Origin: Lytechinus pictus
Taxonomy: Eukaryota
NCBI RefSeq assembly: GCF_037042905.1
Contig: NC_087247.1
Span: 19,282,001 to 19,346,000 of the forward strand
Direction: 5' to 3'
Length of the DNA: 64,000 nt
In this document: one piece after another, positions 6,599 to 15,177 of the stretch
Layout of the letters: the number at the start of each line of letters is the position of its first letter
Position numbering within the stretch: position 1 is the stretch's first letter
The notes under the pieces: model-generated
The model's database searches: none
What the model saw: only the letters and a program-made list of their open reading frames with translations
What the model was told of the DNA's origin: nothing
Translations under genes and position numbers: made by a program

Positions 6599-7613
6599 AT
6601 CACTATCAACCAACTTCTACTGTTCAAAGCAACAAAAAAAAAAATTATAGTGCATGTAACCATGCAGTAAAATGCTTCATATCTGTGACAGTTTTTGGCG
6701 AGTTAGTTCCAACACAATTAGCGGATGTAGAGAACAGTAAGAAATGAGTCAAGATTGTATCCAGAATAGAATAGAAACAAAAGACTGAATGTAGATATCA
6801 AAATTGTAGGCACAGCTGTAGTCACAAGATGGCGCTATCTCCAATGTGCATGAAATGTCCAAGTGCGCCATCCAGATGCCTAGATGCAGTTTTATGTCCA
6901 TAAATAACAAACTAAGGTGGTTACTAGGGTGGTTACCAAGGGCAATGGGCATAGTTAGCAAGATTTCTGCAGTTGCACCTGACCCACCCCTTATACACGG
7001 GCATACTTAAAGCTAAAGGCACTCACACGTATTGCGAGGTTAGTATATATATATATATTTTAGAGTTGTCGTTAACATCGCTTCATAACGTGAATGATGT
7101 TAGCCGAAACCCATTCCGCTACTCACCAGGGCTTTTTCTGGTGAAAAGCGTTCCATTTTCAATTTTTAACATATTTTTTTATTTAACCACTTGACTGCTA
7201 TAGGCTGTAATGCGCACTGACCCCCCTGGTGCTACTGAATGGGACTAACAAGTTAGATCTATTTGGGACTACTACCGACAGCAACTTGGGGGAAAAATTG
7301 TAAATAATCACATCACTTTCCTCATCACTTTTTCCAATATCCATACAAAAAATCATCTTCCCCTTGTGACACAGATCTTTCACTATATTTATTACTCCTA
7401 TCGTCTAAAGTTTCGTCAAAATCCTTCTGATTCACTTCTCCACTGCGAGTTGCCATTTTGAACTGAGCGCCGTACACTATCACTATGGAAAAGTGAATAC
7501 AAACATTTATAAATCACTGCGAAAGTTTCAATAACTTTTGTGGAATAGCGCCATCTGGTGACCATAGTCTGAAATTTGATATACATGCGCTGTTTTCATC
7601 GTAGGGGTATTAA

Positions 7614-8374
7614 AGGGATGCGAAAGTCGCCAAACGTGGTGGTTTTGAGCTAGGCCTGGCTCGAGTAATCTTCGCAAATCTCCGTTCATCGTCGGCAACC
7701 CGAGAACTCAATGTAGAGATACGCGGTGGGCCTTGCTTTCGAAAAATATCGAATAGTAACGGTCGTTCACGATCGCTTGAAGGCCTTCGGTGGGCGGCAA
7801 TTGGCGAGTCAATTAAGCTTGGAAAAAGCCTAAAGATCGCCAGCGCACTTCCGGGTACGGGTTCCCTCCTCCCGACGGCCGGCTACAGCCTACGATCGCC
7901 TTCGACAAATGTTTACCGGTATCAAAAGCTGAATATTTTTGCTGTTTTCTTGTTATATCGCGCGTTATGGAAAAAAAAAAATCGTCTTGGGATAGTTCAA
8001 GAGTAAGGCTTCGGACAGCACATGAATCTTGGTTGAAACAAAGGGCAATTTTTGTAAACGAGAGAGGAATTGGAAACAACTATGACGAAGAATTCGCTCA
8101 TCATCTGTTGCAGCAACATGGTGCGATGTGCACTAGTGTTACCAAACCCTGTATCCCTTCTCCCGAGCTGTCGGCGCGGACAAGAGGCATCACCAGCACC
8201 AACGATGCTGTGAGTGTGAGTGGCTCTGCCTCGAGCTCTGGTTCTGCCCGTGCTTGGCTGGGTCGGTGAGAGTTGTAATTCAGATGTTCGAGCTCAACCT
8301 CAACTTCAAGTCGCTGAGCAACCCCATGCTCAAGTTATTAGGGATCCTCCTAGACTCACCCCTATAAAGATCAG
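7614..8374 (+). mobile_element. Left end of a Kolobok-like DNA transposon with a remnant exon (ORF 7967-8269)
   Basis: TTAA (7610-7613) followed by an AGGGA terminus. The ORF motif RVRLRTAHESW...G...DEEFAHHLL resembles the RV-I-A-W...D-E-A--LL motif I associate with Kolobok-linked ORFs. Donor cag|gtaagg near 8375. No right TIR found. Confidence 0.45.
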
Positions 8375-9278
8375 GTAAGGATGAGTGGACTAGCATGACT
8401 AGGCCTAGTATAATAGTAAAAAGTATTATTTTCTATTTTTCAAAATTATGAAAATATTGTACATCATGTACGGTACATACATGCATCTATCTAGACTTTG
8501 CTTGTTCGAATTGGCCTTGAGGACTCCGTGATGATATTTAGGGAATATTGGATGGCCTTGAGTGGGATGCGTTGAAATATTGTACGAGCTGAAGCACAAT
8601 TGGATGAGTCGAAGACGAATCAAATTAAAATATTGTTCTTCAGCGAGTAACAATATTTCTATGCATCCCACGAAAATTGGTCATCCAATATTCCTATTAT
8701 TATTTAGATACCCCACAAAGCTAAACATGAATTAATAAAGAAATGTTCGTTTAGTAGTAGGCTGTAGGCCTAGTGTACGGTACTGGTATGTAAACAACGA
8801 ATTCACACACATGCATTGCATTGTATGTATTGCATAGTACATAAAATTGTAGCGTGCATCGCGTCATCTGCATAATTTTTATGAAAAGTGCAGTAATACG
8901 CAATGCAATTTTGTTGTGACGTTACAATAGCTTCATGCGCACAATCATTTATTAACCAATGATGATCTTGTGGGCGGGGCAAAATATTCATTTCGTCCAA
9001 TATTTTAAAAAAATTTTTAATACTTTGTCTCCTCAAAACAACCTCGCGAGACGTCAAAGAATATATCTGCACCTCTAAAACTCTACATCTAAATAATTTT
9101 TAATATTTTGAGATATACCTCTTCATCAGGGAGCCTTGAAACTCTTCCCATAGACGCATAAGTGAGACCTCCACACCCTGACGGATTTAGAAATCCATCG
9201 TTTGGTAAGTTTCAGATCCAAAGCTTACTTGATCTATACTCTATTTCTAATTCTAACATAAAAAGAAAAGGCATAAAC

Positions 9279-9455
9279 TTATTGCAAGTGCCGTGCCAGT
9301 GGTTATCCTGTGCACGGCGGCGGTAATGTACCCATCATGCCCATGGGTGAGTACTACTATACTACCTCGTAGTATTAGTGTGTGGTTATCGGTCACCCAT
9401 GGGTACATTACCGCCACCGTGCACAGGATAACCGCTGGCACGGCACTTGCAATAA
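9279..9455. repeat. Palindromic element with ~62-bp inverted arms
   Basis: TTATTGCAAGTGCCGTGCCAG...GTACCCAT is mirrored by ATGGGTAC...CTGGCACGGCACTTGCAATAA with 2 mismatches. Confidence 0.85.
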
Positions 9456-11006
9456 TTTTTTTTATTATCTACATTTTACATGAAGTAAGCTTTGGATATG
9501 AAACTTACCAAACGATATGAAGCCAATTTCAATTCCTCTCTGTCTTTCTGGTACTTTATATCTATGATTTTACTTAATGTCGAAGCAGGCATGCGGCCAA
9601 TTCGGTGGATTTCTCTATACGCACAGAGAGGGCGCGCGATATTATTTAATAAACTTGCTTGTTTACGTCGTTTACGTCAGATCAGCTGTAGTTGCTGGTT
9701 GCGTTCTAGGCGCTCCGCATTTTTTTCGCTGTTCAGCGTTATTTTATGATGTAGCGCCATCAGCGATTATACGTGAGATGCCTGTTGATTTTTTTGGTAC
9801 AATTTCCTATTATGCGCCGGCGACTTGAATCTAGACTGTTCGATAAGAAAAATTCGCATTTCGATTGTTGTTTGCGTAATTTCCACCGCAGTATTAAGGA
9901 TCGGACGGAGTATCTTGGCCGAGATTTGAAGGTAAGCGTTTAAAATCCCTTTTTATGAATATTTTGGAGCATATTTTTAAAATTAATTCAATGAACAGAT
10001 TTAGATGAATAAATTTAGTATATTGTGAAGATTTTGGCGTGTCATTCTCTCACATTCGTGTGATGAATGAAAACGTCAAAATTCATTATGAAATGACATG
10101 CGTTGTGCGACTGCGAGGTTAGTACAACTAACCTCGCATGCTTGTGATTGTGTGAGTGGTTATCGGTCACTCACACTAATACGAGGTTCGTATATATATA
10201 CGAACCTCGTACACCGGACCGTGTTTGACCGTAGATTTCGAAGTAGTCGGCAAACATTGCTTCATTGCTGAAGTAATATTTGCCGAAACTCCTTCTCGCT
10301 ATGCACCGGGGCTCTTTCCGGTAAGTAGCAATACATAACAAAATTATACATATGATATTATACTAATTTCATTTAAAAAGAGCAAATTTCGCTTACCTCG
10401 GCCTAGCAAGTGACTTCGTTTGTCTCTTCTAAGGAAATACAAGGAAGCCCGTTGGTGGCGCTAATAAATTTCACAACCTTGATTCAGCTCCTCGGTAATT
10501 TTATAACTGTGTCTAAATTCTTTGAATGCGCAATTCTTATGATTAATTTACTAATTATGGGCACCAATAAATAAAATACCTTCAAAAACATAATTCAAGA
10601 TTACTATTTGCGATGATAACACTTTTGTTGCAATTAATTTAAAACGATGACTAATATAATTTTTTTTTTTAAATACACATGCCTGGAATGAAACCAGCTG
10701 CAGTACAAGCAGTATATTAACGTCACGGTATACCAAAGTGTGAGTGCCAAAGTCTATATACAATGAAAAGATTGGACACTTCATGGACTTCGCGTAATGC
10801 CTTGCGTCGATTTGCGTGTAAAATAGTGTAGGTTCCTAATCTTTCCCTTGTCGTGTCTTTGATATGAATATAAATCGCGCGCCCTCTTTAGGCGAAAATT
10901 GATATCTACGCTGACCAAATTTTATCTCCGTGAAATCTTCACTAAAGATCAAGAAAATATACATAGGCCTATTGGCCATATTAGCTAATATGCCCGCCGC
11001 CATTAA

Positions 11007-14000
11007 CAGTAGAGGCGCTGGTCAGAAAATTGGGATCGTCCCCGTTTACAGGGACTGTCTCAGTCTATAAGGATTTCTCCACACAAGAAATCTAGGAAAG
11101 TTCATTCACCTGTTGAGTGCCGACACCAATCAAGAGTGCTAGTCAATGTAAACATATCGGGTTTCATAACAAGATTATTGGAAGACGCAAGTCATAATAA
11201 ATAAACGGTGAACTGGGGGGAATTGAGGTCACTGAATCTATTTTTAGCACTCTCAATCACTCTAGGCGACACCCCAATACTTACCCGTGCTAATAAACTG
11301 GGACTCCACTCACGCGCGTTTGGGCCTCCCTAGCTTAGAACTAAGCACTAATATCACCTTAAAAACCACTCATCCTACGAACGAGGTTATAATATAACCT
11401 CGTTCTCGGCTGTATACCTCTCTATTGTTAAAATATACATTGGTCATTTTCCCCCCATCTGTTGCCCAAAGCATCGCGAATCAGTTCATACTTGAACTGA
11501 TCCGTTGATGTAAACTGTTATTTTGACAGATATGACTTTAAATTAATAAATATGATATAAAAAATGAATAAAAACTCACCGATTTCTCAACGTGAACCTC
11601 ATCCAACTGCCTCCATTACGTCTATTGTGTTCGACAGTGACAAATCGAAAAAGAAAAAAGAACTCACGAAACCATAGAGGCTCATCAACCCGTTTGGACC
11701 ACTGACCATTGATGTTTCGACGAAACTTTGCTTGTAATGAATTCTGGTAAGGAAGTCTTGATAGCCTCAATCAAGACAAATTTGCAATTTTGTTTCATGT
11801 TTATACAAAGTCAAAAGTGATACTAGTAGTTGTGAAAGTGGAATGAAATAAGACATTTTTGTATGAAATAAAAAAAAATTAAGGAGAAATTCAGTTGTTT
11901 CGATTTTGTTAATTTTCTGTTATGGGACTCTTGATGAAAAAGCCCCTTATTCTTTTCTAATTAATGAACCTGACGATAGAAATACTTTTCACAAAGTTAG
12001 GCATTAATTTCCAAATTATTATGTAACAGAAATTCAGAATAACAAACTTTACTGTGGGTCTAATCAGGGGAGAATCCAGGATTTTCCAAAGGGGGAGGGG
12101 GTGGTTTCTTTTACAGAAAAAAATAACAAGCTCCCCCCCCCCCGTGAAGGAGATTTATGTAACGAATAATTTCACAATTATGATTTGATTTTGATTTATT
12201 TGATTTAGTTATTTATTTATTATGATAACAGCTCCTCGCTATACAGTATGAAGTTTCAAGTTTGTTTTCATTGATTTAAAATCCTAACCTAAAGGATTTT
12301 CATTAAGAAATAAATAAAATAAAAAATCACTTACCACAAAGGCCTATTTAGGGGTAGATCACAATTTTCAAGGGGAGGGCGGGAAAGTTTCAAGTTAATT
12401 TAATTGATTTCAAATCCAAACATAAAGGATTACAATCAAATGAAATTAACAGTACAAATTATCAAACAAAATGGATGCAAAATAAATGTGTTCTATGGCT
12501 TTCGAGGGGGTGGGCACGAGCCTGATGTGCTCCCCATCCTGGATAAATAAAAGAAACTCATTAAAAAGAATTGGAACGTAATTATGTTCTGTTTTATCAC
12601 TTTGTCTTGAGTTTCTTGCCCTAGCTTCCATTCTTTTCACATTTCAGCCTTTACCCATATTAATTTCAGGATGGTACAAAATGTTGGCTTACAAAAGTGA
12701 TATGATGATGAATATTCCATAATAATATGAAAAATGATAGAAAACCAAAATAATAATATTAATAATTAACCCTTACAATGATAGTACTCAATAAAAGAGA
12801 GGCATCGGGGATCGAGAAAAGAAGCAATAACCCCCCCCCCCCAAAAAAAAAAGGCATCATATTTCCTTTCAGCATACGACAAGATACAGTTCATTATAGA
12901 ATAAACTAAGCTGATGGCGCTAAAATTATTCTGATGTATAAAATAATAAAAATAAAATATTGTGTGTCAGGGGAGAAAGAGACTACTATCGCTGGATCTT
13001 GGATTTCCGAAATAGAAGCATCACCGGAAACAGGTATCTGTGGTGAGAAGCATTTTTATACAGCTTTGTAGAGGACAGTGGTGTGGTCGCTTCCGTTAGC
13101 TTTCTTTAATTGAGCACAAGAGGGCGCGTTACATCCTCTACGTAGAAGTCTATGCGCTGCTGAGGATCATGACAAATTTCATCATACATTCTGACGATTT
13201 ACCGAAGAGTCCTCGAATAATTGACAAGATATAGTTGAGTCCAAGATAAATTCCAGCAACAACGGAAGGAAGATCAACGTTTGGTTCGGGGGGAAAGACT
13301 GGTAAGTCAAACTCTCTTACTTTTACATTTTTTATCACAAATTTTGTCTATGAGTACGCCTCACATACCTCTAGTCCCATCCCCTACCTTTTGCTGTTTG
13401 GCAAATGGTCGGGGATGACGAGTGTTAAAAACTAAATCTACAAGGTATGTATAATCTATTTATAAATTTAATAATGTTTAATCGGTACTCACCGGTTCTT
13501 TTGTTGCATTTTCAGACCATTTCTCACAATTCTTCGTAAATATTTGCGGCAAATTTTGTCGCCATAGACAGCTTAGCGTCCATCTTTATTGATAAATGGA
13601 GCGCCCTTTACGATAGTTGTTAATGCCGTGGAGAAATCGTTAGGCATTTTGGCCTGTGTTCAAGGCGTTCTTTCTGTTTTATTTTTATATTGAAGATTGT
13701 GCATTTGTTGAATAGCGCCGTCTACGTCAGGTATGAGATCGAGTGTATAAATACACTCTTCCAAAATAATTATGATTCCGACCTGGCGCTGTTTAACTTC
13801 AATCTCTTTCACCTAAATTAGCGATGAATGCTAGCATTATAAAATATATATTATTAACGTCTGACGAAAAGAATAACCAACCGATCAGCTGACGAGAACG
13901 CGAATCACGTGATCTTCATATCAGCTTCGATCGCGAGTCAGAAGAGAGGAGCAGTTGCCCAGAAAATCAGGAAAAAGCCGTGAAAATGTAAGTTCCCCTT

Positions 14001-14366
14001 CATTTCTTTCAATTTTTTTTATTGCTAACAATGTATTCAATTAGTGAGATCGAAATGTAATGATTAGACAGTACGATAGCTTGTAGTTTTGATAAAATAC
14101 AAAAATAATCATCTTCACAAAGATTTCTGACACAAAATACTACTGATGTCGCCTATGAGGTCCATACATGTAATGTTGGACCTCATTGGTACTAGGAGTG
14201 CTCTCAATTCCCCTAATTGCTGCCTTTGTCCCGTAGGGAGAAGTGAAGAAAAAACGTCCCCATAAACAAGGACAGTCTCAATTTATCAAGACATAATTTG
14301 TCTTGGTTTATAAGGATATCCTTGTTTTCTGGGACAATCCCAATTTTTGAACCAGCGCCTCTACTG
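11007..14366. mobile_element. Non-autonomous TIR DNA transposon, 3.36 kb, 5-bp TSD (ATTAA), superfamily unresolved
   Basis: Left TIR CAGTAGAGGCGCTGGTCAGAAAATTGGGATCGTCCC; right end GGGACAATCCCAATTTTTGAACCAGCGCCTCTACTG. ATTAA flanks both ends (11002-11006 and 14367-14371). Confidence 0.75.
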
Positions 14367-15177
14367 ATTAATACCGCTCATCTAAGTAAAAAATCAAGGA
14401 GAAGTCACAGAAGGATCTAAATGATTCGGTAAGTGTCATAGCAGAATGTGAAATACCAGATTACTGGTGATATTTTATGTGGGCAAAAGCCCACTATCTT
14501 TTTGACTTGTCGTGTGTGTCGCGTGCATATGAGTATGACTGATATTCCTTCGCACGCGAGATGATATGATTATGAACCCATGGGTGGTTATCGGTAAGAA
14601 TTAAGATATTTTTAGCAATATATCGACAGAGAATTTTCTTAACAATAACAGCCCTAATTATTATACCAGGCATTGGTCGAGTGCTAACATTACAGCCTAA
14701 CTTACACCCGAGTCCCACAGAGTCAGAGAGAGAGAGAGAGATCATCCCACAAAAGGCGCAAGGCCACATCACAAAATGAGTCACTCACACTAATCTCAGT
14801 GCATGGGACCACGACAAAGAACAATAACGAAAAGGTCGGCCATAGGTTTATTACTAGGGTTAGATCTACTTGCATATAAAACGCAAATGAAATTGATTAT
14901 GAAGAAAGAAGAATGAAGAGATCCATACGCGTGTGCTTACCACTTCCCAGTTACAGAATATAAAGTTGTAAATTACAATGACAATATATTATAGGCAGCT
15001 TCTACTTTGCTTTGCAATCCGCTTTAGCCTTTGCGCTATGTTGTTTTATAAGCCGCGCCCTCTCTGGTTAGTTTTAAAGCGGAAAAAGAAGACAATGATA
15101 GAAAATGAAGATTCGAAGCCAAAATGAAAGAAAGAAAGAAAGAAAGAAAAAAGAAAGATGGAGAGTTATAGTAAGAA

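What the first reader, a model, noticed from the sequence alone, without database searches (positions are those of the whole stretch)
7020..10330. Repeated twin-hairpin module with compensatory substitutions: candidate novel structured RNA or ssDNA element
Seen: 7063-7150 and 10241-10329 are diverged homologs that keep the same fold. Hairpin 1 is TTAACATC..TTCA-loop-TGAA..GATGTTAG in one copy and CGGCAAACATTGCTTCA-loop-TGAAGTAATATTTGCCG in the other, followed by invariant CCGAAAC. Hairpin 2 is CACCAG..CTGGTG versus ACCGG..CCGGT. At least three pairs co-vary (T-A to A-T, C-G to T-A, A-T to G-C). Both copies follow the same CACTCACAC..CGAGGTT module. In the second copy, hairpin 2 sequesters a consensus splice donor (CCG|GTAAGT). 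A third, more distant copy may lie at ~12981-13053 (CCGAAA..CACCGGA..TGGTGAGAAGC). Inference: a selected structure such as a splicing switch, a ribozyme-like RNA, or a transposition cis-element. I do not recognise it as a named family.
Basis: partly seen in the sequence, partly recalled or inferred. Interest (0 to 1): 0.72.

Follow-up and report, generated by a model that had tools for sequence, protein, structure and literature searches.

The report
Hairpin-rich end of a sea-urchin transposon
The two "twin-hairpin modules" are the near-terminal left-end regions of two related, very abundant non-coding jumping genes in a sea-urchin genome; the hairpins look like signals needed for jumping, not a ribozyme or splicing switch.

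Summary
7063-7150 and 10241-10329 are diverged homologs. Both fold into the same two hairpins (z -4.9 and -5.8), and three pairs changed on both sides. The proposed third copy (12981-13053) is not real.

The modules are positions ~75-165 of two subfamilies (A, B; 73% identical over ~700 bp) of ~1-kb non-coding cut-and-paste transposons. These have ends CACTCACAC...CCCATGGGTG and perfect 9-bp target-site duplications. The genome holds at least 1,656 intact left ends.

Copy A is a 167-bp stump. Copy B is a full element split by a later 3.4-kb insertion. A third family (Y) sits inverted beside it on the same 9-bp target.

Three results suggest a structure-dependent transposition signal:
- Hairpin 1 recurs at the homologous spot in Y and in a 180-bp MITE, with unrelated stem sequences.
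- Stems evolve about 2.6-fold slower than linkers in lineages that kept transposing.
- Pair-making changes are fixed in those lineages, whereas private mutations mostly break pairs.

The enzyme was not found. An AcademH partner is plausible from the 9-bp duplication only.

There is no Rfam match, and RNA reads show no splicing at the GTAAGT.

This scan met the same family earlier on other DNA (s1-317579). It is ordinary in kind and modestly interesting in detail.

The parts
7020..7186 (+). Truncated copy of transposon family A (family positions 1-199 only). It starts at the left terminus CACTCACAC and breaks off into unrelated sequence at 7187.
   Evidence: The consensus of 17 full copies matches only 7020-7048 and 7057-7186. 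Full copies are about 972 bp with 9-bp TSDs.
7071..7104 (+). Hairpin 1 of copy A: a 15-bp stem with one bulge.
   Evidence: MFE folds as RNA and as DNA.
7103..7110 (+). Conserved single-stranded linker GCCGAAAC (copy A).
   Evidence: GCCRAAAY is kept in the A, B and Y families.
7117..7150 (+). Hairpin 2 of copy A: core CACCAGG..CTGGTG plus a short outer stem.
10168..10965 (+). Family B element, left part (family positions 1-781).
   Evidence: 95.8% identical to the consensus of 19 copies. The family is about 983 bp, with at least 386 candidate copies at 96-100% identity.
10180..10211 (+). Terminal palindrome hp0 (CGAGGTTCGTA-(TA)n-TACGAACCTCG). It is sequence-conserved in all families.
   Evidence: Perfect 19-nt palindrome I13. 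It is present in 1,656 intact left ends genome-wide against 0 for the control pattern.
10247..10286 (+). Hairpin 1 of copy B: 17 bp with one C/A mismatch.
   Evidence: The model also matches its reverse strand, as expected for a palindrome.
10282..10289 (+). Linker GCCGAAAC (copy B).
10298..10329 (+). Hairpin 2 of copy B. It includes the donor-like CCG|GTAAGT (GT at 10321-10322).
   Evidence: Folds. No joint at this place in the RNA reads.
10966..14382 (.). Unrelated later insertion that splits element B. It carries 48-nt inverted repeats at 11007-11054 and 14319-14366.
   Evidence: (I3).
14383..14586 (+). Family B element, right part (family positions 786-977), ending ..CCCATGGGTG.
   Evidence: 91.7% identical to the consensus. 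Right terminus found.
9394..10158 (-). Complete copy of the related family Y (765 bp), inverted and head-to-head with B. Its own hairpin 1 lies at about 10042-10070 with a different stem, and it has no hairpin 2.
   Evidence: At least 623 candidate copies at 86-95% identity. Alignment and fold.
9385..9393 (+). Target-site duplication GTTATCGGT, first copy.
   Evidence: Three exact copies in the window against 0.23 expected.
10159..10167 (+). Target-site duplication GTTATCGGT, second copy, shared by Y and B.
   Evidence: with the end coordinates.
14587..14595 (+). Target-site duplication GTTATCGGT, third copy, right flank of B.
9197..9384 (.). Fragments of further family members. 9197-9342 is a right-end fragment in + orientation. 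9343-9384 is a 42-nt left-end fragment in - orientation. Together with the right end of Y they form the 9197-9516 palindrome.
   Evidence: Inverted repeats I1 and I2, termini and the sequence itself.

Best explanation
The twin-hairpin module is the left subterminal region (about positions 75-165) of a family of non-autonomous cut-and-paste DNA transposons. The family ends are CACTCACAC...CCCATGGGTG and it makes a 9-bp target-site duplication.

The window holds a 167-bp stump of subfamily A and a full copy of subfamily B.

The most likely working model has three parts:
- The sequence-conserved outermost ~45 nt (the terminus plus the CGAGGTTAGTA palindrome hp0) are the transposase recognition and cleavage site.
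- Hairpin 1, and hairpin 2 in the A/B clade, are accessory cis-signals that must stay self-complementary for an element to keep transposing.
- These hairpins are read as a palindrome or as an extruded DNA hairpin, not as a fixed sequence.

What is shown:
- The elements are mobile and abundant.
- The palindromes persist through compensatory and pair-making changes in proliferating lineages.
- The palindromes decay neutrally after insertion.
- A palindrome sits at the homologous spot in four families, with different stems.

What is inferred:
- That a protein reads the structure.
- That the mobilising enzyme is an AcademH-type transposase with its helicase.

Sub-probabilities: transposon subterminal region 0.97; palindromes selected for transposition 0.6-0.65; AcademH partner about 0.45.
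For: Mobility and abundance:
- Each module belongs to an interspersed repeat with hundreds of copies at 96-100% identity.
- Element limits and perfect 9-bp TSDs are seen in 19 of 32 end pairs, plus 2 at 8 of 9.
- There are 1,656 exact left ends and 287 intact hairpin-1 patterns genome-wide, against 0 for the controls.
- A and B are 72.6% identical over 718 bp, so the module is simply part of a homologous element.

Structure:
- On 39 distinct copies, 86% of cells are paired, against 25-50% when partners are slid.

Signs of constraint:
- On a tree of 90 copies, internal branches carry 23 stem changes against 59 non-stem changes in equal numbers of columns.
- Internal branches show 9 pair-making against 6 pair-breaking changes. 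Terminal branches show 3 against 39 (Fisher 8.5e-5; my most conservative recount 0.02).
- An ancestral C/A mismatch in hairpin 1 was repaired independently, as C-G in young A and as T-A in young B.
- Private mutations in young B copies hit stems and non-stems equally (8 against 8), as expected for neutral decay after insertion.

Same place, different stems:
- Family Y and the 180-bp MITE 'Z' share the flanks, but each has a different palindrome at the same place.
- The right-end hairpin also differs in sequence between A/Y and B.

Enzyme:
- AcademH is reported to make 9-10-bp TSDs (PMC10045372).
Against: - No transposase was linked to these ends.
- The three double changes are single A-versus-B events. 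By my rough estimate about one such pair is expected by chance at 28% divergence, and one of the three is explained by CpG decay.
- RNAalifold on the plain alignment does not recover hairpin 1. It offers a rival short helix with an equally 'covarying' pair, which shows how clade structure alone can mimic covariation.
- The abundant older B variant still carries the C/A mismatch (about 25 of the first 100 listed hits, against 10 for the repaired form). A perfect stem is therefore not required.
- The polarity of several 'pair-making' events depends on where the tree is rooted.
- The model-fitted alignment leans towards the structure.
- Z-scores for the Y and Z hairpins are modest (-1.9 to -3.2), and one mutated Z copy has none.
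Confidence: 0.6

Rival explanations
1. The palindromes are functionless by-products. Subterminal inverted duplications would arise during transposon end repair or template switching. They would then be kept roughly self-complementary by templated (quasi-palindrome) mutation and by chance CpG decay. Under this view the sequence conservation in the stems reflects ordinary constraint on nearby binding motifs.
For: - The family is prone to palindromic rearrangements: the 9197-9516 palindrome and a 52-bp element made of two facing left termini.
- The hairpin-2 change CCGG to CCAG/CTGG is a pair of CpG transitions.
- Mismatched variants are abundant.
- A spurious helix also shows 'covariation'.
Against: - Templated correction should also act after insertion, yet private mutations almost never create pairs (3 of about 70) and mostly break them.
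- Different palindromes occupy the same position in four families.
- Stems evolve about 2.6-fold slower than linkers on internal branches.
Confidence: 0.2
2. The hairpins act at the RNA level. Read-through or element-derived transcripts would fold into hairpins that feed small-RNA pathways (silencing of the family) or regulate an element-borne transcript.
For: - Low-level RNA coverage on both strands over all three elements.
- The stems tolerate G-U type pairs, and two of these are invariant on the + strand.
- The fold is stable as RNA.
Against: - C/A mismatches, which would be wobble pairs only on the other strand, are equally tolerated, so no strand is favoured.
- Coverage is low and featureless over the module, with no defined ends.
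- No Rfam family matches above threshold; only sub-threshold hairpin-like hits appear elsewhere in the region.
- Selection acting on host-level silencing would not explain why pair-making changes are fixed in the lineages that proliferate.
Confidence: 0.1
3. One reading: a splicing switch in which hairpin 2 sequesters a donor, or a self-cleaving or otherwise catalytic RNA.
For: B-type copies carry CCG|GTAAGT inside hairpin 2.
Against: - The donor is absent in A-type copies.
- There is no joint at 10320|10321, although about 10-13 reads cover it in two runs.
- No ribozyme or riboswitch family matches.
- The unit is a transposon end present in hundreds of unrelated genomic contexts.
Confidence: 0.02

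Closest known systems
AcademH DNA transposons (helicase-encoding Academ lineage) and their non-autonomous derivatives
   Same: - A fixed 9-bp target-site duplication. AcademH is reported to give 9-10 bp (PMC10045372).
- It occurs in animals.
- Earlier notes of this scan report an intact AcademH in this same genome. That claim is untested here.
   Different: No shared termini with an autonomous AcademH were shown here. No helicase or transposase remnant was detectable in the elements by Pfam or PDB sequence searches.
Mutator-like elements (MULEs), including non-TIR MULEs
   Same: A 9-bp TSD, and non-autonomous derivatives in high copy number.
   Different: The ends are only about 5 of 7 complementary, instead of long TIRs. 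The termini start with CAC rather than the usual G-rich MULE ends (from memory). The three MULE-domain loci inspected lack these termini.
Subterminal repeats and palindromes of P, hAT and CACTA elements (accessory transposase-binding sites inside the ends)
   Same: Short terminal repeats are followed by internal cis-elements within the first 100-200 bp. These are needed in cis, and the two ends are asymmetric.
   Different: TSD lengths differ (8, 8 and 3 bp). In those families the subterminal motifs are conserved in sequence. Here the stem sequence is free to change while self-complementarity stays.
Structure-read transposon ends: the Helitron 3' hairpin and the IS200/IS605 subterminal hairpins
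   Same: A hairpin near the end whose structure, not its sequence, is kept. The mobilising systems involve single-stranded DNA or a helicase.
   Different: Those elements make no TSD and use HUH nucleases. The present family makes a 9-bp TSD, typical of DDE enzymes. The resemblance is functional analogy only.

Membership tests
Class II cut-and-paste (DDE-type) DNA transposon, non-autonomous | Target-site duplication of fixed length flanking defined ends. | tested here: met
   19 of 32 end pairs have a perfect 9 of 9 TSD and 2 more have 8 of 9. Individual copies are shown.
Class II cut-and-paste (DDE-type) DNA transposon, non-autonomous | Many dispersed copies with the same ends and no coding capacity. 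| tested here: met
   At least 331, 386 and 623 candidates for families A, B and Y. 1,656 exact left ends. No Pfam match for any open frame.
Class II cut-and-paste (DDE-type) DNA transposon, non-autonomous | Terminal inverted repeats. | tested here: inconclusive
   Only CACTCAC against CACCCAT (5 of 7) is shared between the two ends. The ends are otherwise asymmetric.
AcademH | 9-10-bp TSD. | tested here: met
   The criterion comes from PMC10045372.
AcademH | Termini shared with an autonomous element that encodes an Academ DDE transposase and an SF2 helicase. | not testable with these tools
The primary AcademH paper is not held.
AcademH | Remnant of the helicase or transposase gene inside the derivative. 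| tested here: not met
   Nine open frames gave no Pfam hit at E up to 10. Two gave no PDB hit. The remnants could be too short or too degenerate to detect.
Mutator-like element (MULE) | 9-11-bp TSD. | tested here: met
Mutator-like element (MULE) | Long TIRs, or a MURA-type transposase element with the same termini. | tested here: not met
   There are no long TIRs. Five MULE-domain hits exist in the genome; the three fetched, including an 812-aa open frame, have no CACTCACA, CCATGGGTG or CGAGGTTAG within 10 kb.
Helitron | No TSD, 5'-TC...CTRR-3' ends, and insertion between A and T. | tested here: not met
   A 9-bp TSD and CAC...GTG ends.
Described structured RNA (Rfam: ribozymes, riboswitches, cis-regulatory elements) | A match to a curated covariance model at its gathering score. 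| tested here: not met
   Only sub-threshold hits appear, none on the modules: mir-729 at 38.6 against 61 bits on the 9302-9432 palindrome, and TD-1 at 32 against 64.5 bits.

The most novel reading that the evidence does not exclude
The family's ends may be recognised as DNA hairpins extruded after unwinding by a transposon-encoded helicase (AcademH type). Self-complementarity rather than sequence would then be the signal. That would be a DDE cut-and-paste system with structure-read accessory ends, and a first handle on why AcademH carries a helicase.
Probability: 0.15. Interest if true: 0.7.

Novelty: new member of a known kind. Interest (0 to 1): 0.3.

Why it matters
The finding removes a candidate 'novel structured RNA' and replaces it with a concrete annotation. 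Three nested or stacked copies of one transposon superfamily explain most of 7020-14595. This includes the triple GTTATCGGT that another note read as an att-like site.

The family is young and abundant, and it has several co-existing subfamilies. That makes it a natural experiment on which end features a transposase needs. The data point to self-complementarity at fixed positions.

Transgenesis already exists for that sea urchin.

Tried and rejected
- **Coding exon.** Copy B is open in one frame on each strand (52 and 63 aa). However, A and B differ by 1-nt indels, A has stops, and nothing matches Pfam. Rejected.
- **Third copy at 12981-13053.** Rejected.
- **Rfam.** Nothing on the modules.
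- **MULE partner.** Five domain hits were found and three loci fetched. None has the termini.
- **RecQ or helicase route to an AcademH copy.**
  - RecQ_Zn_bind gave two hits, which I take to be host genes; they were not inspected.
  - Helicase_C gave candidates with long open frames (C10:32262524, C2:8454458).
I did not try to read those letters by other means.
- **Idea from earlier notes that ~0.9-kb derivatives carry a 'RecQ helicase start'.** By eye there is a faint FR...G.D..APPTG-like string on the minus strand of B. It spans a stop and a frameshift and has no Pfam or PDB support. Not supported.
- **Claim that the most prolific subfamilies are the ones with perfect stems.** This holds for A but not for B, where the mismatched older variant is commoner among exact matches. 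Dropped.
- **Dyad symmetry of target sites.** None: 1.1 of 4 positions, which is the chance level.
- **Literature search for the terminal sequences.** No paper found. The AcademH primary paper is not held.
Full report
**What is there.**

Reading 6800-10500 and aligning the proposed copies shows that 7063-7150 and 10241-10329 are real homologs. Each is preceded by CACTCACAC..CGAGGTT. Each contains hairpin 1, the linker GCCGAAAC and hairpin 2.

Both fold far better than dinucleotide shuffles. As RNA, z is -4.87 and -5.83. As DNA, z is -4.67 and -5.86. On the reverse strand, z is -5.1 and -6.05, as expected for palindromes.

The third copy at 12981-13053 fails every test. It aligns poorly, folds at z -0.71, and gets no hit from a covariance model built on the family.

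**What it belongs to.**

A search of the window's own 812-Mb genome shows that each module belongs to a high-copy interspersed repeat. The earlier notes call this genome a sea urchin, Lytechinus pictus.
- Module B has at least 386 candidates. The 40 scored are 96-100% identical.
- Module A has at least 331 candidates, 97-100% identical over 104 nt.

Comparison of flanks defines elements of about 983 bp (B) and about 972 bp (A). They begin CACTCACAC and end CCCATGGGTG. They are flanked by perfect 9-bp duplications of unrelated sequence. Among 32 end pairs in the DNA I hold, 19 have 9 of 9 and 2 have 8 of 9 matching flanks.

The consensuses of A and B are 72.6% identical over 718 bp. The module is therefore not an island of similarity. 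It is positions ~75-165 of two diverged subfamilies of one element.

Exact-pattern counts give 1,656 intact left ends and 287 intact hairpin-1 patterns in the genome, against 0 for the reversed control patterns.

No open frame in the elements matches Pfam or PDB sequences. A and B differ by 1-nt indels inside the module. The elements are therefore non-coding.

**Map of the region.**
- 7020-7186 is a stump of A (positions 1-199).
- 9394-10158 is a complete inverted copy of a third family, Y (765 bp, at least 623 candidates).
- 10168-10965 plus 14383-14586 is a full B copy. It is split by a 3.4-kb unrelated insertion.
- GTTATCGGT occurs exactly three times, at 9385, 10159 and 14587. This means Y and B inserted one after the other into the same 9-bp target.
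- 9197-9384 holds further end fragments. Together with the right end of Y they make up the 9197-9516 palindrome.

**Is the structure selected?**

On 39 distinct A/B-type modules, 86% of cells form standard pairs, against 25-50% when partners are slid.

These are weak on their own:
- All three separate the A clade from the B clade.
- At 28% divergence, about one such pair is expected by chance (my estimate).
- The hairpin-2 change is two CpG decays in CCGG..CCGG.
- RNAalifold on the plain alignment misses hairpin 1. It proposes a rival helix with an equally 'covarying' pair.

Stronger evidence comes from three directions.

First, a covariance-model alignment of 90 copies was placed on a tree.
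- Branches shared by several copies represent changes made while the lineage was still transposing. They carry 23 stem changes against 59 non-stem changes in equal numbers of columns.
- Those branches show 9 pair-making against 6 pair-breaking changes.
- Private changes on terminal branches show 3 pair-making against 39 pair-breaking (Fisher 8.5e-5). My most conservative recount allows for root ambiguity and gives 0.02.
- Within the young B family, private mutations hit stems and non-stems equally (8 against 8). That is neutral decay after insertion.

Second, an ancestral C/A mismatch shared by older A and older B variants was repaired independently. It became C-G in young A and T-A in young B. 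Both intermediates of the T-A to A-T switch (T/T and A/A) still exist as copies.

Third, family Y and a 180-bp MITE ('Z') share the flanking sequence. At the homologous place each carries a different palindrome: TTCATTC.TCACA/TGTGA..GAATGAA in Y and GTGGGTCGC/GCGATCCCAC in Z. Y has no hairpin 2. The right-end hairpin likewise differs between A/Y and B.

Against a strict requirement, the mismatched older B variant is commoner than the repaired one among exact matches.

**What it is not.**
- Rfam gives nothing on the modules.
- The GTAAGT in hairpin 2 is confined to B-type copies.
- Three rRNA-depleted RNA runs give low coverage on both strands over all three elements. About 10-13 reads cross 10320|10321 in two runs, and no joint is seen there. 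Only about 6% of each run was read, so rare splicing cannot be excluded.

**Which enzyme?**

A 9-bp TSD points to Mutator-like or AcademH elements. AcademH is reported to make 9-10-bp TSDs (PMC10045372).

Three of the five MULE-domain loci were inspected, and none has these termini.

Earlier notes of this scan report an intact 17-kb AcademH in this genome. The link therefore remains an inference.

**Mechanism proposed.**
- The sequence-conserved terminus plus hp0 is the recognition and cleavage site.
- Hairpin 1, and hairpin 2 in the A/B clade, are accessory signals whose self-complementarity is required in cis.
- They are possibly read as extruded hairpins, which would suit a helicase-carrying transposon.
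- The binding step and the identity of the enzyme are inferred, not shown.

**Relation to earlier scan notes.**

The same family was met before on other DNA (s1-317579: minimal ends, 9-bp TSD, enzyme not found). Stacked insertions with a tripled TSD were also noted elsewhere (s1-311601, s1-324963).

Noticed in passing
window 9385-9393, 10159-10167, 14587-14595: The same 9-bp target GTTATCGGT is present three times because family Y (inverted) and family B inserted successively into one target. Earlier notes report the same stacking elsewhere, so re-use of the duplication next to a resident end may be a habit of this family. Among the other 325 kb I hold, no second 9-bp-spaced stack was found; one head-to-head pair is spaced 15 bp (L038:1661).
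   Followed up: partly
window 9197-9516: A large palindrome is built from two facing right ends of Y-type elements (9197-9342 in + orientation, 9394-9516 in - orientation). They surround a 42-nt inverted left-end fragment (9343-9384) and one TSD copy. One RNA-run contig joins 9269 to 9486 on opposite strands. The origin is unclear: it could be aberrant transposition or foldback repair.
   Followed up: partly
L027:1401-1440 and 2425-2464: A family B copy sits inside the loop of the terminal palindrome hp0 of another family member (TSD ATGCTATAC). The AT-rich hp0 loop can therefore serve as a target.
   Followed up: no
G000:C1:33731137-33731188 (coordinates from the pattern search): Two 26-nt left termini face each other with no spacer, forming a 52-bp palindromic micro-element. 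Several other left ends lie head-to-head within 30-40 bp (C1:16463/16527 and C2:26918/26971).
   Followed up: no
window 7545-7556, 9752-9762, 13710-13721; inverted at 6826-6838 and 12910-12922: The motif TAGCGCCATC (reverse AAGATGGCGCTA, YY1-like from memory) recurs in several unrelated repeats, and in the centre of families B and Y near GC-rich promoter-like sequence.
   Followed up: no
window 9690-9963 (+ strand, which is the minus strand of element Y): RNA coverage peaks here and drops after about 9963. A 40-codon open frame from ATG runs to a donor-like AAG|GTAAGC (GT at 9932-9933). Families A and B keep the same donor-like site on their minus strand (B: GT at 10396-10395). This may be a retained first exon and promoter of the parent element's gene. 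No spliced partner was seen in the stretch laid.
   Followed up: partly
window 10966-14382: A 3.4-kb insertion inside element B has 48-nt inverted repeats (11007-11054 and 14319-14366, 81% complementary) and no open frame of 130 aa or more. It is an unrelated non-autonomous transposon.
   Followed up: no
window 8829-8894 and 9006-9063: RNA reads skip 64 and 56 nt here without GT..AG ends, in the most highly covered bins (8868-9141). These are probably length variants among copies of yet another transcribed repeat.
   Followed up: no
alignment A3, columns 17-21 with 38-42: RNAalifold proposes a short helix between the 5' flank and the loop of hairpin 1, with an apparent A-U/U-A covariation (20 against 16 sequences). 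It is most likely a by-product of the A/B clade split. It is a useful warning about reading covariation in transposon subfamilies.
   Followed up: partly
sequencing runs X5-X14 (organism B): Runs of a second organism hold 8-11% of the sampled words of the Y-plus-B stretch, which suggests that near-identical pieces of these families exist in a related species.
   Followed up: no
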